Source of the DNA: Podarcis erhardii
Taxonomy: Eukaryota
Assembly (NCBI GenBank): GCA_964252035.1
Contig: OZ176202.1
Reading direction: 5' to 3' (one strand)
DNA: 64,000 nt
Made by a program: the position numbers and the translations under genes. Positions 76 to 34,062 of this stretch are shown piece after piece. Below the pieces are notes generated by a model, which did not search any database, was not told where the DNA came from, and saw nothing but the letters and a program-made list of their open reading frames with translations. The first letter of the stretch is position 1. Each line of letters starts with the position of its first letter.

Positions 76-468
76 TGTCAGGGAACTGCCATCGGAGAGA
101 GAGGTGGTGGATAAGTTCCATGAGAATAGGAGAGAATCTGCAGCAGAAGGAACCAGCAGGGGGAGTGCAGGAGTCACAGCGGAGGGGAGGCTCTGGGATA
201 CTTCCAGTGACGACAGCGAAGAGGTAACAAGACCCCCGTTAGGAACTCCCACCCTGCGCCGGAAACTGTCACGCAGAGAGTCACGAAAGCGCATGTCTGT
301 CAAACAGCTTTTATGTTGGCGTAGGTTCCGTAGACGCCCACTGTCAGATTCTACCAGCGACTAACGGAGTCATGCTTTGGGGAGCTCCGTTAGTGCCTAG
401 GTTGGGATGACCAACCAAACCCCAGAGGGATCAAGCTTTACGCACAAGCAGCTCATTATCCCATCACA
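76..468 (+). repeat. 5' LTR (393 bp)
   Basis: TGTCAGGGAACT...CCCATCACA; identical by eye to 5169-5561. Confidence 0.98.
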
Positions 469-470
469 GC

Positions 471-481
471 AATCTGACAGT
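471..481 (+). promoter_or_regulatory. Self-priming primer binding site (Tf1-type)
   Basis: AATCTGACAGT, 2 nt after the LTR, is the exact reverse complement of ACTGTCAGATT at 340-350. There is no TGG-type tRNA PBS. Confidence 0.85.
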
Positions 482-514: not shown

Positions 515-1537
515 ATGAGCGAACCAGCTGGAACCGGAGGTGCAGGAGCTGGGGCTGGAGGAGGTCCAAGCCTGGAAGACAGGTACAGGGCGTTGGAGGT
601 CCAGCTCGCGCTGCAAACGGCGAGGCTCGAGGAGAGGAGGGCTCAAGATGCGGATAAAGGGAAACCCACCCCACTTGCCAGAAAGGTGCCTGGATTGGTG
701 CAGAAATTTGGGGGGGATCCCAGGAACTATCAAGCCTTTAGGACAGAGATGCAATATGCTCTTAACCTACTGTTTGATGACTTCCCTGATGAGAACTCTA
801 GAGTGGCGTACGTGATCGGCCATCTAGAGGGAGGGGCGAGGGACTGGGTGCGGCCCCTGATGGCAGCCAATAATGAAATCTTAAAGGACACTATGAAGTT
901 TTTTCGCGCCATGGACTTGATGTTTTCCAGTGAGATTGAGCAAGGGGTGGTGCGGAGGCAGTTAATGGCGTGTAAACAGGGGAGCCGATCTGTACGTGAG
1001 TACTGGACTGAGTTCAGCATGCTGATTCATAGACTGGGGTGGGACCTTGCGAGTGAACCTATTCAAATGCTGTTTGAAGAAGGGCTCTCTCCGGCAGTGA
1101 AAGATGAACTTTCCCGGGCGCCCAGGGCGGAGTCTATGGATCATCTGACTAAATCAGCGCTGTCCATAGGAGCGCGCCAGGAGGCAAGGGCTTTGGAAAA
1201 GCGGGAAGGAAAAGGGGAACGTTGGAAGGATTTCCGCATTCCAGAGATTCCGGAGCAGCCTTTCCCGCCAGCAGAGCCGATGGAAATTGGAACAGCGCGC
1301 GCGCGCGCAGTTTCAAACACCAGTGAAGGGCGGAAGAAGGAGGGGAAGGGCGCCAAGAGATGTTATCTCTGCCAACAGCCAGGTCACTTTGCCAGAGTCT
1401 GTCCGCAAAGGAAGGAATGGCAAGGAATGGCGGGAACTGTTGGGGGGAAGGAGGAAGGAGAAACAAGCAGCGAGCAAGTAAAAGCCAACGCCTGGCTGCC
1501 AGCATCAGGGCACCGCAGTCAGGCAGAGGAGAAGTGA
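515..1537 (+). CDS. gag: Gag (sushi/PEG10-like capsid, CCHC zinc knuckle), 340 aa from first ATG
   Basis: ORF track 497..1537; first ATG at 515. Motifs: KFGGDPRNYQAF and VIGHLEGGARDW (Ty3/sushi-type capsid), EPMEIG, and CYLCQQPGHFARVC (CX2CX4HX4C) at 1361-1402. Confidence 0.93.
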   Translation: MSEPAGTGGAGAGAGGGPSLEDRYRALEVQLALQTARLEERRAQDADKGKPTPLARKVPGLVQKFGGDPRNYQAFRTEMQYALNLLFDDFPDENSRVAYVIGHLEGGARDWVRPLMAANNEILKDTMKFFRAMDLMFSSEIEQGVVRRQLMACKQGSRSVREYWTEFSMLIHRLGWDLASEPIQMLFEEGLSPAVKDELSRAPRAESMDHLTKSALSIGARQEARALEKREGKGERWKDFRIPEIPEQPFPPAEPMEIGTARARAVSNTSEGRKKEGKGAKRCYLCQQPGHFARVCPQRKEWQGMAGTVGGKEEGETSSEQVKANAWLPASGHRSQAEEK

Positions 1538-4500
1538 ATGTGCCCACGCCGGAACCTCCAAGACCAGCGCTTGTGATAGAGGTGTTGCTGGAACTGTCCA
1601 ATGGACACCCACTAAAGATAAAAGCGCTATTGGATTCAGGCAGCTCCTGTAATTTCATGAGTAAGGAGTTTGCAGCTGAACACCAGATACAGACTATCCC
1701 ATTAAGTAAGCCTTTGCAGGTTACCACGATTGATGGGAGGGAACTGTTGGGAGGAGAAGTGAGCCAGCAGACTGTTCCAATGGTAATGAGGGTGGCAAGA
1801 CACACAGAACTGATAGCGTTTAACGTAGCCACTTTGGGAGGAGCTCCCATTATTTTGGGAATGAGCTGGCTAGCACTACACGATCCTCTAGTAGGCTGGC
1901 ATCAGAGAGTGGTTTCCTTTGGATCAGCACATTGCCTAGAACACTGCAAAGAGGGAGAGGTTCAGGCAGGGGCCAGGGCCACTCTAGCAGGGGTGGAAGT
2001 GATGGGCAAGGGCAAGGTGCCACCACAATATGCTGACTTGATTGACGTCTTTAGCGAAAAGGAAGCAGATAGACTGCCCCCGCACAGACCCTTTGACTGT
2101 CAAATTAACTTACTCCCAGGAGCACAATTGCCAGTGGGCAAGCTGTATGCAATGTCAGACAGTGAAATGCAGGAGTTAAGGGAGTTCATTGACAAGAATC
2201 TCAAGCGAGGTTTCATCAGAGAGTCACGAGCGGTGGGGGGCAGCCCAGTGTTCTTTGTGGACAAAAAACACACGGGCAAACCGAGGCTTGTATGTGACTT
2301 CAGAAGCCTAAATGCAGTGTCAGAACCAGTGACTTTCCCTATGCCTAGAATTGATGACATTCTGACACAGGTGAGAAAAGGGAAAATTTTTACCAAGCTG
2401 GACCTTAGGGGGGCATATAACTTGATACGTGTGAGAAAGGGGGATGAGTGGAAGACCACTATGTTCACCCCCTTGGGGGCTTTTGAGTATTTAGTTATGC
2501 CTTTCGGATTACAAGCGGGCTCCGCCTGCTTTCAATCATTCATGAATCACGTCCTGGGGCCACTGCTCTACAAGAACTGCGTAGCGTTCTTAGATGACGT
2601 CCTGGTGTACTCAGCGAATGAGGAGCAGCATGTGCGAGATGTAAGAGAGGTACTGAGCAAGTTGCGAGAAAATCGGCTGTGGGTGAAACTGGAGAAGTGT
2701 CAGTTTCATACCAGGGAGGTGGAATTCCTGGGGTACCGGTTGTCTGACAAGGGGTTGGCCATGGATCCCAGCAAGGTTCAAGCGGTACTGGAATGGAAAA
2801 CACCAAAGACCAAGAAGGACGTGCAAAGGTTCCTGGGCTTCGGAAACTTCTATAGGAAGTTCATCAAGAACTTTGCCCATTTGACAGCGCCTATCACGGA
2901 TTGTCTTAGTAGCAAAAAGAAATTTGTTTGGACGGAAGAAGCGCAGCGGGCGTTCGAACGCTTAAAGCAGGCGTTTGCGTCGGAAGAGCAACTGTTGCAT
3001 GTGGATCTACAACAACCAATGAGAGTGGAGACTGACGCGTCAGACCGAGCGGTGGGGGCCGTTCTTCTCCAGCCGGGAAAAGATACGTCTGAATGGAAAC
3101 CGTGTGCATTCTTCTCGCGGAAGTTGAACAAATCCGAGAGGAACTACACAGTATACGACCGAGAACTGCTCGCCATTCATGAAGCCTTCCGGAAATGGCG
3201 GCACTTGCTGATTGGGGCGCAGCACAAGGTTCAAGTCCGAACTGACCACAAAAATCTGGAATATTGGAGAACAGCCCGAGTGCTGAACCAGAGACAAGTA
3301 CGATGGGCCCAGGAGTTCTCCAAATTCCACTTTGAGATTCGTTACGTGCCCGGATCCGAGAACGTGAGGGCGGACGCTCTTTCCAGGAAACCTGAGTACT
3401 TAGAGGGGGAGGGAGCGCCCGAGGCAAGGCATGTAATCCCTGAAGACCGCTGGGTGTGTGGGGCGGCATTGGTGGGGCAGAGGGAACTGATAGAGGGTAC
3501 TGAGAACGATGAATACGCCCAAGGGAAACTCAGAGAGCTCCGGAGGGCAGAGGAGAACACAGGGGGGTTTGAAGAAAAGAACGGGGCGTTGTATTACAAA
3601 GGGGCACTGTACATACCCGACGGGGAACTGAGGGGCAGAGTACTCAAGCAGTTGCATGACAGCCCCACCGCGGGACATTTTGGACAGCACAAAACCATGT
3701 GGTTGGTTACCAGGGAGTTTTGGTGGCCCAAGGTGAGGGAGGACGTACGGGAATATGTCAGGGGTTGCGTCAGGTGCCAGCGAGCAAAAGGAGAGAGGGT
3801 GGCGCCAGCGGGGCTATTACAACCCTTACCCACGCCCGAAAGGCCATGGGAGGCAGTATCCATAGATTTTATGACGGACCTGCCAAAATCCAAAGGCAAA
3901 ACAGCTGTCATGGTGGTGGTAGATCTATTAACCAAGATGTGTCATTTTATAGCTTGTTCACATGCAGTCACAGCGGAGGAAACCGCCAAGTTGTTTGTAG
4001 AACATATTTTTAGGTTGCATGGCGCCCCCTTGAGGGTTTTGAGCGACAGAGGGAAACAATTTACTTCCAGGTTCTGGAGGAAACTGATGAGCTTATTACA
4101 CGTAGAACTCAATTTCTCAACTGCTCGGCACCCAGAAACCAATGGGCAAGCGGAAAGGGCAAATGGGATTTTACAACAATACCTGAGGTGTTATGTAAAA
4201 GACAGAGAAAATGATTGGGTGGATAAGTTACCTCTAGCAGAATTTGCCTACAACAACGCGGAGAACGTGTCCACAGGGATGAGTCCCTTTCTGGCAAATT
4301 ATGGGTGTCACCCCCGGGCATTCCCAGGAGAGGGAGGGGAGAGGTGGAGCGTGCCGGCGGCGGAATATTTTTTTGAAGAGATGGAAGCGATCCACCGTCA
4401 GCTTCAACTTAACTTAGAGAAAGCCAAGGAAGAATATAAGAAGCAAGCAGACAAAAATAGGAGGGAAGGTGAAACCATAAGGGTGGGGGACCGGGTGTGG

Positions 4501-5457
4501 TTATCCACCCAAGGACTACCGTTCAAAGGAGGGTGTAAGAAATTGAGACCCAAAAGATTGGGACCCTTTGAGGTCATACAGCAGGTCAACCCAGTAGCAT
4601 TCAAACTCAGGCTGCCCAGTCACATGAAGTTACACCCAGTATTTCACAGGTCATTACTGTCGCCGTACCGAGAGGGACGTGAGTGGGGGGAGCATGAGAG
4701 AGAGGCCACCCAAACGCCCGTGATAGAAGAGAGAGAGCGCGACATGAACGTGGCAGGAATCATTGATTCCAGGTGGAAGGGGAATCAGGTGGAATATCTG
4801 GTAGAATGGGAGGGGGAAGTAGAGTCGGAAAACACTTGGGTACCAGCAGAGGTAGTCAATGACGAGGTTTTAATAGAAACATTTCATCAGCGTTTCCCAA
4901 GAAAACCGCAACCCGTGGCACGATTTAGAAGGGAACACTTTGGTACCACCGATGAGGAAGGAGAGTTTGAAGGGTTCCCTGAGTCAGGGGTGGGTGAGGA
5001 AGCCGACTCAGACGAAGAAGAGGAAGACTGGGAGAGAGACGGTACGCCGTGGCTAGAAGTGTTTGAATCCTCGGACGACGAGGAGAGTTCCTTCAGGGGC
5101 TTTCCGTCCTCACCGCCAGTGGGAGAGGAGGCGGGAGGGGGTGAAGGGGGCCCTGGGGGGGAGGTGGATGTCAGGGAACTGCCATCGGAGAGAGAGGTGG
5201 TGGATAAGTTCCATGAGAATAGGAGAGAATCTGCAGCAGAAGGAACCAGCAGGGGGAGTGCAGGAGTCACAGCGGAGGGGAGGCTCTGGGATACTTCCAG
5301 TGACGACAGCGAAGAGGTAACAAGACCCCCGTTAGGAACTCCCACCCTGCGCCGGAAACTGTCACGCAGAGAGTCACGAAAGCGCATGTCTGTCAAACAG
5401 CTTTTATGTTGGCGTAGGTTCCGTAGACGCCCACTGTCAGATTCTACCAGCGACTAA
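1360..5457 (+). CDS. pol: Pol (protease, RT, RNase H, integrase with GPY/F, chromodomain, acidic/basic tail); -1 frame relative to gag, probably entered near 1481
   Basis: Uninterrupted 1365-codon frame. LLDSGS protease (DSG at 1633), FLDD RT motif (2587-2598), ETDAS RNase H, H-X6-H...CX2C integrase zinc finger, IDF/SDRG/PETNGQAE DDE core, LGPF GPY/F motif, chromodomain about 4741-4908. Confidence 0.96.
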   Translation: MLSLPTARSLCQSLSAKEGMARNGGNCWGEGGRRNKQRASKSQRLAASIRAPQSGRGEVNVPTPEPPRPALVIEVLLELSNGHPLKIKALLDSGSSCNFMSKEFAAEHQIQTIPLSKPLQVTTIDGRELLGGEVSQQTVPMVMRVARHTELIAFNVATLGGAPIILGMSWLALHDPLVGWHQRVVSFGSAHCLEHCKEGEVQAGARATLAGVEVMGKGKVPPQYADLIDVFSEKEADRLPPHRPFDCQINLLPGAQLPVGKLYAMSDSEMQELREFIDKNLKRGFIRESRAVGGSPVFFVDKKHTGKPRLVCDFRSLNAVSEPVTFPMPRIDDILTQVRKGKIFTKLDLRGAYNLIRVRKGDEWKTTMFTPLGAFEYLVMPFGLQAGSACFQSFMNHVLGPLLYKNCVAFLDDVLVYSANEEQHVRDVREVLSKLRENRLWVKLEKCQFHTREVEFLGYRLSDKGLAMDPSKVQAVLEWKTPKTKKDVQRFLGFGNFYRKFIKNFAHLTAPITDCLSSKKKFVWTEEAQRAFERLKQAFASEEQLLHVDLQQPMRVETDASDRAVGAVLLQPGKDTSEWKPCAFFSRKLNKSERNYTVYDRELLAIHEAFRKWRHLLIGAQHKVQVRTDHKNLEYWRTARVLNQRQVRWAQEFSKFHFEIRYVPGSENVRADALSRKPEYLEGEGAPEARHVIPEDRWVCGAALVGQRELIEGTENDEYAQGKLRELRRAEENTGGFEEKNGALYYKGALYIPDGELRGRVLKQLHDSPTAGHFGQHKTMWLVTREFWWPKVREDVREYVRGCVRCQRAKGERVAPAGLLQPLPTPERPWEAVSIDFMTDLPKSKGKTAVMVVVDLLTKMCHFIACSHAVTAEETAKLFVEHIFRLHGAPLRVLSDRGKQFTSRFWRKLMSLLHVELNFSTARHPETNGQAERANGILQQYLRCYVKDRENDWVDKLPLAEFAYNNAENVSTGMSPFLANYGCHPRAFPGEGGERWSVPAAEYFFEEMEAIHRQLQLNLEKAKEEYKKQADKNRREGETIRVGDRVWLSTQGLPFKGGCKKLRPKRLGPFEVIQQVNPVAFKLRLPSHMKLHPVFHRSLLSPYREGREWGEHEREATQTPVIEERERDMNVAGIIDSRWKGNQVEYLVEWEGEVESENTWVPAEVVNDEVLIETFHQRFPRKPQPVARFRREHFGTTDEEGEFEGFPESGVGEEADSDEEEEDWERDGTPWLEVFESSDDEESSFRGFPSSPPVGEEAGGGEGGPGGEVDVRELPSEREVVDKFHENRRESAAEGTSRGSAGVTAEGRLWDTSSDDSEEVTRPPLGTPTLRRKLSRRESRKRMSVKQLLCWRRFRRRPLSDSTSD
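1477..1545 (+). promoter_or_regulatory. Putative -1 ribosomal frameshift element with H-type pseudoknot
   Basis: Stem 1: 1490-1499 GCCTGGCTGC with 1515-1524 GCAGTCAGGC (one G-U). Stem 2: 1508-1513 GGGCAC with 1540-1545 GTGCCC. A-rich run GTA AAA ends 6 nt upstream. Located in the gag/pol overlap. Confidence 0.7.
5155..5168 (+). other. Polypurine tract
   Basis: GGGGGGGAGGTGGA directly abutting the 3' LTR; it lies within the pol reading frame. Confidence 0.8.
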
Positions 5458-5561
5458 CGGAGTCATGCTTTGGGGAGCTCCGTTAGTGCCTAGGTTGGGA
5501 TGACCAACCAAACCCCAGAGGGATCAAGCTTTACGCACAAGCAGCTCATTATCCCATCACA
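5169..5561 (+). repeat. 3' LTR (393 bp)
   Basis: Identical by eye to 76-468; its first 289 nt are in the pol frame. Confidence 0.98.
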
Positions 5562-5632
5562 GGTAGGTAGCTGAATTAGGTAGCTGAATCAAAATCGTCC
5601 CCATCCCCTTTGACATGTTGATTGAGAAATTA

Positions 5633-31400: not shown

Positions 31401-32678
31401 TGCACTTGTACTGAAGGAAGAGTGGGCCATTAATCATATATATATATATATATATATATGCAAAAGCCAGAGATACTCTGAGATGATAAGTAGCTGCATA
31501 TACCAATTCCCATATCAGCAGGGATTACTTTAACAGGCTCATTAGTAGGGGTGGGGAACTTGTGGCCCACCCAGATGAAGCTGGGCTACAGATCCCAGGG
31601 CTGGCCCACCCATGAGGTGGACTGAGGCAGCTGGCTTAGGAGGCAGAATCCAAGGGGTGTCACTGCTGGAGAAGTGAGGAGAAGTGGCTTCTGGCGAGAA
31701 CTTGTGAGGGTTTTCAAGAAATCTCAAGAGATCTTGCTGGAACCCACCACCATGTGATCCCCGGTAAGTTAGGCTACAGCTACTTTCCCATTTTGCCTCA
31801 GGCGGCAAAGATGCAATGTTTTGAGAAGCATTTCCTGTCTATCTGCTTCAGCCACAAGTGGCTGTTTGCTAAACTCAATTTCCCCCAAATCTTGTTGTTC
31901 TCTTCATCATGGCCCATGTCATGGTCCCCTGCAAAGTTTGTACCATCTTCTTGGCAGAGAAACATATGCATTAGGTGTGGAAGTCTACTTCACATTTACT
32001 AAACTGAACCCCTCACACCCTATAAATCAGTCTTCTGGCATCATCTCTTGAAATGAGAACAATGGGAAGTCTTATATGGTATGAAGACTAGTTACTTTGT
32101 TTGGAGATCTAACTGGATCACCAACTTTTAACTGTCAACATCCAATCTTATCACCCATCTCCCTGCAAAGCATTATCATACACTTTACTTGTAATGTTGC
32201 CAAAATGACAGGGACATAAACATCTGAATACGTGGGTCTCCTTACGCATGAGAAACCTATAAGGAGCAAAATGCTATTTCTAATTTAATCATTGCCCCAG
32301 CCTAGCTGATATATTAGGAAGATAGTGTATAACTTACTTCCTTTCAGAAGATTCATAGCAAGAGCATGAGACTCTTGAGATTAGAACCCCACACCCTCTT
32401 CTGCTTCATTGGCAGAGTGATGCAGTATAAAATTAATTGAGCATAAATTTAGCTAACTCCATCTGAAGACAATTTAAAAGAGCTTTGGCTTATTTCTTAT
32501 AGGGAAACTTTACTGTGAATTAGCCCAAAGGCATAATGGGAGCCAGGTAAATAGAGCAGGAAACTGGGAAAAGTTCACATAATGTCCTGGCAGATCATAT
32601 CTATATTCATAAAATGCTGACTTCCAAACAGTAGTTACGTACAGCATGACCCTTAGAAATGGAAGATACAAACGTAAT

Positions 32679-34062
32679 GGTGGTTGCTGAACAACTCCAG
32701 GCACGCCTGGAGGATGCAGACCATTTGGATCCCTTCCAATCGGGATTCAGGCCTCATCATGGGACTGAAACTGCCTTGGTCGCGCTGGTTGATGATCTCC
32801 GGCGAGCTAGGGACAAAGGTGAGAGTTGTTTCCTAGTTCTGCTGGATCTCTCAGCGGCCTTTGATACAATCGACCATAACATCCTTCTGGACCGTCTAGA
32901 GGGGCTGGGAGCTGGGGGCACTGTTATACAGTGGTTTCGCTCCTTCCTCCTGGGCCGTGTTCAGAAAGTGGTGGTGGGGGATGAGTGTTCAGACCCCTGG
33001 GCCCTCACTTGTGGGGTGCCTCAGGGTTCCGTCCTCTCCCCCATGCTTTTTAACATCTATATGAAGCCGCTGGGAGAGATCATCAGGGGGTTTGGACTGG
33101 GTGTCCATCAATATGCAGATGATACCCAGCTCTACCTCTCTTTCAAATCAGAACCAGTGAAGGCGGTGAAGGTCCTGTGTGAGTGCCTGGAGGCGGTTGG
33201 AGGATGGATGGCGGCTAATGGATTGAGGTTGAATCCTGACAAGACAGAAGTACTGTTTTTGGGGGACAGGGGGCGGGCTGGTGTGGAGGACTCCCTGGTC
33301 CTGAATGGGGTAACTGTGCCCCTGAAGGACCAGGTGCGCAGCCTGGGAGTCATTTTGGACTCACAGCTGTCCATGGAGGCGCAGGTCAATTCTGTATCCA
33401 GGGCAGCTGTCTACCAACTCCACCTGGTACGCAGGCTGAGACCCTACCTGCCCGCGGATTGTCTCGCCAGAGTGGTGCATGCTCTAGTTATCTCCCGCTT
33501 GGACTACTGCAATGCGCTCTACGTGGGGCTACCTTTGAAGGTGACTCGGAAACTACAACTAATCCAGAATGCGGCAGCTAGACTGGTGACTGGGGGCAGC
33601 CGCCGAGACCACATAACACCGGTCTTGAAAGACCTACATTGGCTCCCAGTACGTTTCCGAGCACAATTCAAAGTGCTGGTGTTGACCTTTAAAGCCCTAA
33701 ACGGCCTCGGCCCAGTATACCTGAAGGAGCGTCTCCACCCCCATCGTTCTGCCCGGACGCTGAGGTCCAGCGCCGAGGGCCTTCTGGCGGTTCCCTCATT
33801 ACGAGAAGCAAAGCTACAGGGAACCAGGCAGAGGGCCTTCTCGGTAGTGGCACCCGCCTTGTGGAACGCCCTCCCATCAGATGTCAAAGCGATAAATAAC
33901 TACCTGACATTCAGAAGACATCTTAAGGCAGCCCTGTTCAGGGAAGTTTTTAATCTGTGATATTTTAGTGTATTTCTGGTTTTTATGGAAGCCGCCCAGA
34001 GTGGCTGGGGAAACCCAGCCAGATGGGCGGGGTACAAATAATAAATTATTATTATTATTATT
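32679..34062 (+). mobile_element. 5'-truncated young L2-clade LINE in KCNK5 intron 1, antisense to the gene
   Basis: Open RT frame to stop 33960 (QSGFR, LDLSAAFD, GVPQGSVL, YADD); 3' UTR with (ATT)n tail; possible TSD AACGTAAT (32671-78) / AATGTAAT (34063-70). Confidence 0.93.

What the first reader, a model, noticed from the sequence alone, without database searches (positions are those of the whole stretch)
4939..5103. Integrase tail carries two acidic FxGF motifs mimicking host LEDGF/p75-IBD (TND) interaction motifs: candidate new integration-targeting module
Seen in sequence: after the chromodomain, Pol encodes HFGTTDEEGEFEGF (4936-4977) and VFESSDDEESSFRGF (5059-5103), separated by another acidic block (ADSDEEEEDW). 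Established knowledge: host partners of the LEDGF/p75 integrase-binding domain (JPO2/CDCA7L, MLL1, POGZ, IWS1, MED1) dock through an acidic FxGF motif, often preceded by CK2-type S/T-D-D-E sites whose phosphorylation raises affinity. JPO2 has two such motifs in tandem. The same motif class (TIM) binds TFIIS-N-terminal domains of several elongation factors. Inference: this chromovirus may tether its integration complex to LEDGF/HRP2 or other TND proteins on transcribed chromatin by short-motif mimicry. That would converge on the HIV-1 host factor but through a linear motif rather than the catalytic-core dimer. I do not know of this being described for a vertebrate Gypsy element.
Basis: partly seen in the sequence, partly recalled or inferred. 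Interest (0 to 1): 0.88.

Follow-up and report, generated by a model that had tools for sequence, protein, structure and literature searches.

The report
Lizard retrotransposon integrase tail mimics LEDGF-binding motifs
A young, intact lizard Gypsy-type retrotransposon has two conserved short motifs after its integrase that closely resemble the peptides host proteins use to dock onto the chromatin reader LEDGF, so it may aim its insertions the way HIV does but by a different contact; binding itself is untested.

Summary
Pol of an intact chromovirus (identical 393-nt LTRs, 5-bp target duplication) encodes ...HF-GTTDEEGE-FEGF (4924-4977) and WLEVF-ESSDDEESS-FRGF (5050-5103) after its chromodomain.

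Each motif is bipartite: a hydrophobic anchor ending in Phe, then an 8-9-residue linker (Ser/Thr plus acidic), then FxGF. This is the published architecture of LEDGF/HRP2-type TND-interacting motifs.

- **Conservation:** the motif recurs in at least seven diverged lizard element lineages (Podarcis and Anolis). The anchor Phe and the Gly-Phe are invariant in 18 of 18 instances.
- **Selection:** common variants in the tail are mostly synonymous (8 of 11).
- **PDB search:** a profile of the motif found only two sequences in the whole PDB, both LEDGF-IBD ligands (JPO2 M1 and MLL1). Their E-values (0.5 and 1.1) are weak.
- **Chromodomain link:** every motif-bearing chromodomain has a broken aromatic cage (13 of 13). 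All 98 with an intact cage lack the motif. One Anolis family has the motif and no chromodomain.

Binding to LEDGF and any insertion bias remain untested, because I had no referenced IBD sequence for complex prediction. First readers flagged the same idea on other copies in this genome. I found no paper describing it.

The parts
76..468 (+). 5' LTR (TG...CA), 393 nt
   Evidence: Identical to 5169-5561 with 0 mismatches. The flanking 5-bp GGTAG at 71-75 is repeated at 5562-5566.
471..481 (+). Primer-binding-type site, the exact reverse complement of LTR 340-350 (Tf1/sushi-style self-priming signature)
   Evidence: 3 matches in the window against 0.03 expected.
515..1537 (+). gag (capsid-like region plus CCHC zinc knuckle)
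   Evidence: Retrotrans_gag, Ty3_capsid, zf-CCHC.
1360..5457 (+). pol ORF, 1365 aa: protease, RT, RNase H, integrase (H2C2, rve, SH3_Tf2-1), chromodomain and tail. It lies in the -1 frame relative to gag.
4750..4893 (+). Integrase C-terminal chromodomain with a degenerate aromatic cage (M/W/E at the three cage positions)
   Evidence: Pfam Chromo at aa 1131-1178; cage alignment; folded at pLDDT about 90.
4924..4977 (+). TIM-like motif 1: anchor FRREHF, linker GTTDEEGE (8 residues, two CK2-type Thr), then FEGF
   Evidence: AlphaFold2 predicts a helix over aa 1186-1194, the anchor. Common variants at 4944 and 4962 are synonymous.
4978..5049 (+). Variable acidic spacer between the motifs (includes ADSDEEEEDW)
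   Evidence: Poorly conserved and indel-rich among relatives. The W>G change at 5029 is found in all contigs covering that site in the four runs.
5050..5103 (+). TIM-like motif 2: anchor WLEVF, linker ESSDDEESS (9 residues, CK2-type Ser), then FRGF
   Evidence: W, the anchor F and S-F-x-G-F are invariant in 20 family tails, and only x varies (R/W/Q). Variants at 5053, 5094 and 5100 are synonymous; 5064 is F>L in one organism.
5155..5168 (+). Polypurine tract, read through by the pol frame
   Evidence: Purine run directly upstream of the 3' LTR start. The encoded GGEGGPGGEVDVRE is near-invariant in relatives.
5169..5457 (+). Last 95 codons and the stop codon of pol, encoded by U3 of the 3' LTR. 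The basic end ...KQLLCWRRFRRRPLSD is conserved.
   Evidence: Helix predicted at aa 1345-1353.
5169..5561 (+). 3' LTR

Best explanation
The disordered tail after the integrase chromodomain carries two functional short linear motifs of the TND-interacting-motif (TIM) class, specifically the FxGF-containing subtype that host proteins (JPO2/CDCA7L, MLL1, IWS1, POGZ, MED1, fly JIL-1) use to dock onto the integrase-binding domain of the H3K36me-reading proteins LEDGF/p75 and HRP2. In each motif a hydrophobic anchor would occupy the first pocket of the domain, the acidic and phosphorylatable 8-9-residue linker would lie on its basic patch, and FxGF would fill the second pocket. Two motifs in tandem would add avidity. 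The proposed result is that the integration complex is tethered to transcribed chromatin, taking over from a chromodomain that has lost its methyl-lysine cage. What is shown: the motifs exist, have the full TIM architecture, are conserved under protein-level selection across diverged lizard element families, and co-occur strictly with cage loss. What is inferred: the partner (LEDGF/HRP2), phospho-regulation, and the effect on insertion sites.
For: (1) Architecture. In 18 instances from at least 7 lineages, the anchor F, the G and the last F are invariant, the first F is kept in 15 of 18, and the linker is always 8-9 residues. The review PMC9987994 defines TIMs as a helix with F/V/L/I anchors, an acidic linker of 8-16 residues rich in D/E/G/S/T, and an optional FxGF that is essential in all known LEDGF/HRP2 partners.
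(2) PDB profile search. The motif profile was run against 177,635 distinct PDB sequences and returned two hits at E<=10. One is the JPO2 M1 segment of a LEDGF-IBD fusion (DIFNAPSDDEEFVGFR), aligned without gaps so that anchor F and FxGF are in register. The other is the MLL1 IBD-binding peptide.
(3) Selection. Across about 70 genomic copies in three families only the x of FxGF varies. Eight of 11 common tail variants in four organisms are synonymous against 22% expected (p=5e-4), including F1245 ttc>ttt and G1247 ggc>ggt. Against a 60%-identical relative, tail pN is 0.245 and pS 0.79, like the chromodomain.
(4) Disorder. The tail has pLDDT below 50, with a helix predicted on the anchor of motif 1.
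(5) Module swap. Intact cage without motif 98, broken cage with motif 13, intact cage with motif 0. An Anolis family has no chromodomain but carries RLRDIF-AEPSDEDS-FEGF.
(6) Deep conservation of the host interaction. FxGF recognition by the LEDGF-type domain holds from flies (JIL-1 and JASPer) to humans, so a lizard orthologue should read it.
Against: No binding test was possible. The PDB hits have E-values of 0.52 and 1.1, so they are not significant on their own, and single-sequence searches found nothing. Motif 1 has L or M in place of the first Phe in most close relatives. The family B linker (TPTLSAST) is not acidic. The helix is not predicted for motif 2. The cage-versus-motif association rests on few independent lineages, because families A and B are sister clades. 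The motif was found only in lacertid and anole elements plus two unnamed samples. Whether the tail stays on mature integrase is unknown. I obtained no insertion-site data.
Confidence: 0.5

Rival explanations
1. The motifs are functional docking peptides, but for a different partner. Candidates are another TFIIS-N-terminal-domain protein (IWS1, TFIIS, Elongin A, MED26, PPP1R10) or an unrelated reader of acidic-aromatic peptides, such as histone H2A-H2B or a histone chaperone.
For: Conservation and selection show function but not partner identity. TIMs as a class bind several TNDs. Acidic-aromatic peptides are promiscuous (general knowledge).
Against: The review states that FxGF is essential in all known LEDGF/HRP2 partners and absent from many other TIMs. 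The invariant Gly-Phe and the fixed 8-9-residue spacing match JPO2 M1 in register.
Confidence: 0.24
2. The motifs do bind LEDGF/HRP2 or another TND, but they serve a step other than target-site choice, for example nuclear retention or stability of Pol/integrase, or recruitment of elongation factors to the element.
For: Host TIM proteins act in transcription elongation. The motif sits on a polyprotein whose processing is unknown.
Against: The motif lies at the integrase C-terminus, where chromoviruses and other retroelements carry their targeting modules. It also replaces a cage-competent chromodomain.
Confidence: 0.1
3. The acidic tail acts within the protein, or has no specific partner. It could be an autoinhibitory DNA or histone mimic that masks the basic surfaces of integrase, or its conservation could reflect overlapping cis-acting RNA/DNA signals near the PPT.
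For: The tail is highly acidic, lies next to basic segments, and is just upstream of the PPT and U3.
Against: Variation at motif codons is synonymous, which points to protein-level rather than nucleotide-level constraint. Charge mimicry would not fix F, G and F while letting acidic residues drift. AlphaFold2 shows no confident docking of the tail on the chromodomain.
Confidence: 0.12
4. The resemblance is a chance product of a low-complexity acidic region.
For: The tail is 23% Glu and 16% Gly, and short motifs arise easily.
Against: Shuffle probabilities of 0.0035 and 0.0002. Recurrence in seven or more diverged lineages with invariant F/G/F and fixed spacing. An excess of synonymous variants.
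Confidence: 0.03

Closest known systems
IBD-binding motifs (FxGF-type TIMs) of JPO2/CDCA7L (M1, M2) and MLL1/KMT2A
   Same: A hydrophobic anchor ending in Phe, an 8-residue Ser/Asp/Glu linker, then FxGF. JPO2 M1 (DIF-NAPSDDEE-FVGF) aligns without gaps to the element profile. These two are the only PDB hits. The motifs occur in tandem, as in JPO2.
   Different: Encoded by a retrotransposon integrase tail rather than a host transcription regulator. No significant overall sequence similarity, so nothing indicates gene capture. Binding is not demonstrated.
HIV-1/lentiviral integrase and LEDGF/p75
   Same: The proposed host factor and the proposed outcome: tethering the integration complex to H3K36me-marked transcribed chromatin.
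   Different: Lentiviruses contact the IBD through the folded catalytic-core dimer interface. Here the contact would be a disordered linear motif copying the host's own ligands.
Gammaretroviral (MLV) integrase C-terminal tail and the BET ET domain; HTLV-1 integrase LxxIxE motif and PP2A-B56
   Same: A short peptide in or after the integrase C-terminus recruits a host chromatin or nuclear factor (general knowledge; the HTLV-1 example is listed).
   Different: Different motif, different host domain and different chromatin destination.
Canonical chromovirus targeting by the integrase chromodomain (e.g. MAGGY, Tf1/sushi group)
   Same: Same element class and domain order, with the targeting module at the integrase C-terminus.
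   Different: The aromatic cage is degenerate here (M/W/E) and in every motif-bearing lineage, while 98 motif-less relatives keep it. The tail motifs appear to take over.
Drosophila JIL-1 kinase and JASPer (fly LEDGF homologue)
   Same: A conserved DFxGFDE peptide in a disordered tail docks on the LEDGF domain, which shows the recognition is ancient in animals.
   Different: It is a host kinase, and no upstream anchor or linker comparison was made here.
Ty5 integrase targeting domain and Sir4; Ty1 integrase and AC40
   Same: Short integrase C-terminal peptides in LTR retrotransposons decide the target site by binding a host chromatin or transcription protein (one search lists PMC7459421).
   Different: Yeast elements with unrelated motifs and partners.

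Membership tests
FxGF-type TND-interacting motif (LEDGF/HRP2 IBD-binding motif) | Lies in an intrinsically disordered region | tested here: met
   AlphaFold2 on alignment A3: chromodomain pLDDT about 90, tail mostly below 50.
FxGF-type TND-interacting motif (LEDGF/HRP2 IBD-binding motif) | Short helix with conserved F/V/L/I anchor residues upstream of the linker | tested here: met
   The anchor Phe is invariant in 18 of 18 instances, with hydrophobic residues 1 and 3-4 positions before it. A helix is predicted for motif 1 (aa 1186-1194) but not for motif 2.
FxGF-type TND-interacting motif (LEDGF/HRP2 IBD-binding motif) | Flexible acidic linker of 8-16 residues enriched in D/E/G/S/T | tested here: met
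   The linker is 8 or 9 residues in 18 of 18 instances. It has 3-7 acidic residues in 15 of 18. Family B has a Ser/Thr-only linker with acidic flanks. Definition from PMC9987994.
FxGF-type TND-interacting motif (LEDGF/HRP2 IBD-binding motif) | FxGF core | tested here: met
   G and the last F are invariant and the first F is kept in 15 of 18 (L/M in motif 1 of close relatives). Only x varies among about 70 copies.
FxGF-type TND-interacting motif (LEDGF/HRP2 IBD-binding motif) | CK2-type S/T-x-x-D/E sites in the linker, whose phosphorylation raises affinity | tested here: inconclusive
   Consensus sites are present in 14 of 18 instances, including both window motifs. Phosphorylation itself cannot be tested here.
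FxGF-type TND-interacting motif (LEDGF/HRP2 IBD-binding motif) | Detectable sequence likeness to solved IBD ligands | tested here: inconclusive
   The only two PDB hits of the profile are JPO2 M1 and MLL1 peptides, but at E=0.52 and 1.1. Single sequences give nothing.
FxGF-type TND-interacting motif (LEDGF/HRP2 IBD-binding motif) | Direct, Phe-dependent binding to the LEDGF/HRP2 IBD | not testable with these tools
   No lizard or other IBD sequence was available by reference for complex prediction.
Chromovirus (Ty3/Gypsy with integrase chromodomain) | LTRs, gag, pol in the order PR-RT-RH-IN, and a chromodomain at the integrase C-terminus | tested here: met
   The element falls in a well-supported squamate clade of chromoviruses.
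Chromovirus (Ty3/Gypsy with integrase chromodomain) | Three-residue aromatic cage of a methyl-lysine-binding chromodomain | tested here: not met
   The window has M/W/E at the cage positions. 98 motif-less relatives have all three aromatics.
Tf1/sushi self-priming group | A sequence just after the 5' LTR that is complementary to a sequence inside the LTR transcript | tested here: met
   471-481 is the exact reverse complement of 340-350. Priming itself was not tested.

The most novel reading that the evidence does not exclude
A clade of squamate chromoviruses gave up methyl-lysine reading by the integrase chromodomain. It replaced that function with two phospho-tunable copies of the host's own LEDGF/HRP2 docking peptide, moving integration from heterochromatin to H3K36me-marked gene bodies. 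This would be a natural, linear-motif counterpart of the lentiviral LEDGF strategy, and the first LTR retrotransposon shown to use it.
Probability: 0.38. Interest if true: 0.88.

Novelty: new variant of a known kind. Interest (0 to 1): 0.78.

Why it matters
Integration-site choice decides how harmful a retroelement is to its host and how it persists. LEDGF is the classic lentiviral targeting factor, and no LTR retrotransposon is known to use it. A transposon-encoded copy of the host's LEDGF ligand would have four consequences:
- It would show convergent capture of the same chromatin reader through a completely different interface.
- It would provide a natural example of a targeting-module swap, from chromodomain to linear motif, within one element clade.
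- It would extend the TIM/TND interaction network to mobile elements.
- It would supply short natural peptides that could be tested as LEDGF/HRP2 ligands.

The strict pairing of the motif with loss of the chromodomain cage makes the idea directly testable with existing lizard genomes and chromatin maps.

Tried and rejected
- **Complex prediction with LEDGF/HRP2 IBD or other TNDs:** not run. No such sequence exists in the window or in any search result, the tool's reference list covers only bacteria, archaea and phages, and I did not type a long sequence from memory.
- **Single-sequence PDB searches** with the Anolis tail and with window motif 2: no meaningful hits. This also gives no sign that the motif was captured from a host gene.
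- **ESM Atlas feature search** with the tail: no usable hit.
- **Homologue search on the Anolis tail:** only Anolis itself. The window tail search gave only three Podarcis muralis proteins. Wider taxonomic spread could not be established.
- **dN/dS against the Logan relative:** dS is saturated, so only pN versus pS is reported.
- **Insertion context of this copy:** not resolvable. Neighbouring ORFs are another reverse transcriptase or have no Pfam hit, and one copy would prove nothing anyway.
- **RNA evidence:** no run holding the element is on record as RNA, so expression was not assessed.
- **Key primary papers** (Tesina 2015, Sharma 2018, Cermakova 2021): not held. The motif definition comes from the review PMC9987994.
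- **Chance and nucleotide-level constraint:** both considered and rejected.
Full report
**What is there**

The finding lies inside an intact Ty3/Gypsy chromovirus.
- The LTRs at 76-468 and 5169-5561 are 393 nt long and identical (0 mismatches). They are flanked by a 5-bp duplication, GGTAG. The insertion is therefore very recent.
- gag (515-1537) and pol (1360-5457, 1365 aa, -1 frame) are open.
- Pfam finds protease, RT, RNase H, integrase H2C2, rve, the Tf2-type SH3 domain and a chromodomain at aa 1131-1178.
- The pol frame continues through the polypurine tract (about 5155-5168) into U3 of the 3' LTR, which encodes the last 95 residues of Pol.
- The closest proteins are Podarcis muralis Pol sequences, up to 93% identical over the trimmed Pol alignment. 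Members of related clusters also come from P. lilfordi. The window is thus from a lacertid lizard or a close relative (inference).

**The observation**

Both peptides are at the stated coordinates. They exceed chance:
- In shuffles of the 92-aa tail, P(two or more FxGF) is 0.0035, and 0.0002 when an acidic context is required.
- F-x(8-10)-FxGF occurs 26 times in 201,261 non-tail residues of related Pol proteins. That predicts about 0.01 per tail, against two seen here.

Each FxGF is the end of a longer bipartite unit: a hydrophobic segment ending in Phe, then exactly 8-9 residues rich in Ser/Thr and Asp/Glu, then FxGF.
- Motif 1 is FRREHF-GTTDEEGE-FEGF (4924-4977).
- Motif 2 is WLEVF-ESSDDEESS-FRGF (5050-5103).

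This matches the architecture described in the review PMC9987994 for TND-interacting motifs. That review lists an obligate short helix with F/V/L/I anchors, an acidic linker of 8-16 residues enriched in D/E/G/S/T that is often phosphorylated, and an FxGF that is optional in general. All known LEDGF/HRP2 partners have the FxGF, and it is essential for their binding.

**Conservation**

An exhaustive HMMER search of 1.84 billion representatives with the chromodomain plus tail, and a full-length Pol search, recovered the same unit in diverged lineages:
- the window's own family (P0001-3);
- a Logan contig (P0004, two motifs);
- three P. muralis fragments whose chromodomain-plus-tail matches are only 46-59% identical to the window's (P0006, P0009, P0051);
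- an ENA contig (P0078);
- a sister Podarcis family with 54-57% Pol identity (P0156-159: DFFDDWLF-TPTLSAST-F[HQR]GF);
- an Anolis carolinensis family that has no chromodomain at all (P0207/P0226: RLRDIF-AEPSDEDS-FEGF).

In an alignment of 18 instances the only invariant columns are the anchor Phe, the Gly and the final Phe. The first Phe of FxGF is kept in 15 of 18 and is L or M in motif 1 of the close relatives. The linker is 8 or 9 residues in all 18, and 14 carry S/T-x-x-D/E sites.

Among about 70 genomic copies of the three large families, only the x of FxGF varies. The spacer between the motifs varies and carries indels. In the 15-sequence tail alignment, the only invariant or near-invariant positions beyond the chromodomain fall in motif 1.

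**Selection is on the protein**

Contigs from four coded organisms were laid on 4700-5600. They show a highly repeated family.
- Of the 11 best-supported common variants between 4894 and 5168, eight are synonymous, against 22% expected (binomial p=5e-4).
- Within the two motifs, five are synonymous, including Phe1245 ttc>ttt and Gly1247 ggc>ggt. One is a conservative F1235L seen in one organism.
- Against the 60%-identical Logan relative, the tail has pN 0.245 and pS 0.79, the same as the chromodomain. The motif windows (pN 0.19) are more constrained than the rest of the tail (0.30). dS is saturated.

This rules out chance and a purely nucleotide-level constraint from the nearby PPT.

**Independent pointer to LEDGF**

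A profile built from the 18 instances was searched against all 177,635 distinct PDB sequences and returned two hits at E<=10.
- 6emo_A is a LEDGF/p75 IBD-JPO2 M1 fusion. The match is to the JPO2 part, DIFNAPSDDEEFVGFR, aligned without gaps so that the anchor Phe, the 8-residue linker and FxGF are in register.
- 2msr_A is the MLL1 peptide EDEQFLGFGSDEE.

The E-values (0.52 and 1.1) are not significant by themselves, and single sequences find nothing. What matters is which hits came back: the only two are LEDGF ligands. There is no evidence that the motif was captured from a host gene, so convergence is the simpler reading.

**Structure**

AlphaFold2 on the tail alignment gives a confident chromodomain and a disordered tail with pLDDT below 50. 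It predicts one short helix exactly on the anchor of motif 1 (aa 1186-1194) and another in the U3-encoded basic end (aa 1345-1353). This is what a linear-motif region should look like. No confident docking of the tail on the chromodomain was seen.

**A new correlate**

I aligned the chromodomains of 115 relatives and scored the three aromatic-cage positions.

| Cage | Motif | Count |
|---|---|---|
| Intact | Absent | 98 |
| Degenerate | Present | 13 |
| Degenerate | Absent | 4 |
| Intact | Present | 0 |

- The window has M/W/E at the cage positions.
- The Anolis motif-bearing family has lost the chromodomain entirely.
- Motif-less relatives carry other chromatin-type peptides after an intact cage. 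Fish and some amphibian elements have AT-hook-like PRGRGRPRR. A Podarcis and an Anolis family have HMGN-like RRSARL/RRSARI.
- On a FastTree of 116 Pol proteins, all motif-bearing families fall in one well-supported squamate clade. Families A and B are sisters and the Anolis family sits elsewhere in the clade.

The number of independent events is therefore small, about two to four, and the association should not be read as 13 independent trials.

**Mechanism proposed**

The tail motifs mimic host TIMs and dock onto the IBD (a TND) of LEDGF/p75 and/or HRP2. These proteins sit on H3K36me2/3 chromatin through their PWWP domains. Docking would tether the integration complex to transcribed gene bodies. 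Two tandem motifs and the CK2-type sites would tune avidity. The same recognition operates between fly JIL-1 and JASPer, so a lizard orthologue is expected to read FxGF.
- Shown: motif architecture, conservation, protein-level selection, disorder, and co-occurrence with cage loss.
- Inferred: the partner, phospho-regulation, retention of the tail on mature integrase, and the effect on insertion sites.

I put this at about 0.5. Most of the remaining weight goes to a different partner for a clearly functional motif.

**Novelty**

Full-text searches found no description of an IBD-binding or TIM motif in an LTR-retrotransposon integrase. The key primary papers were not held. Other first readers of this scan flagged the same idea on other copies in this genome. 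Those notes are unchecked and are not independent evidence.

**Limits**

- No binding prediction could be run, because no IBD or TND sequence was available by reference.
- I obtained no insertion-site statistics and no RNA data.
Copies were only compared.

Noticed in passing
window 5104-5457: The pol frame reads through the PPT and 289 nt of U3. The LTR-encoded end (...RRKLSRRESRKRMSVKQLLCWRRFRRRPLSD) is conserved in the family, in the Logan relative and partly in the ENA relative, and a helix is predicted at aa 1345-1353. It may be a nuclear-localisation or nucleosome-contact segment. The U3 part shows 7 synonymous and 10 nonsynonymous common variants, so it is less constrained than the pre-PPT tail.
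   Followed up: partly
window 340-350, 471-481 and 5433-5443: The 11 nt starting 2 nt after the 5' LTR are the exact reverse complement of an internal LTR sequence (3 matches against 0.03 expected). This is the signature of Tf1/sushi-type self-priming rather than tRNA priming.
   Followed up: partly
P0092, P0160-P0164, P0228, P0248, P0259-P0269 (fish); some amphibian relatives: Fish chromovirus integrase tails, and those of some amphibian relatives, begin with an AT-hook-like PRGRGRPRR run directly after a chromodomain with an intact cage. Many of the fish tails end in SPSPEF/Y.
   Followed up: no
P0167 (Podarcis) and P0168/P0169 (Anolis) C-termini: These motif-less squamate chromoviruses end in RRSARL/RRSARI, which resembles the nucleosome-binding core of HMGN proteins. 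Together with the AT-hook and FxGF tails, this suggests that integrase tails are a swap-shop of host chromatin-docking peptides.
   Followed up: no
P0156-P0159 tails (Podarcis family B): Downstream of the FxGF unit these tails carry conserved Trp-rich blocks (SYWWDDRPEEQWRRKW) and a second acidic block (ETDMDVFGDDPGF). Neither has an assigned role.
   Followed up: no
P0335 (Anolis carolinensis XP_062838049.1): A RefSeq model named 'opioid growth factor receptor-like protein 1 isoform X4' clusters at 90% or more identity with the Anolis Gypsy Pol family. It is probably a gene model that absorbed element sequence.
   Followed up: no
window 32659-33960: A separate 433-aa ORF with a reverse-transcriptase domain (RVT_1, E=3e-32), that is, another retroelement in the window.
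   Followed up: no
window 4700-5600 in runs X1, X4, X5, X9: Thousands of contig fragments from four differently coded organisms match this stretch at 85-100% identity. The family is therefore abundant and shared among several related species.
   Followed up: partly
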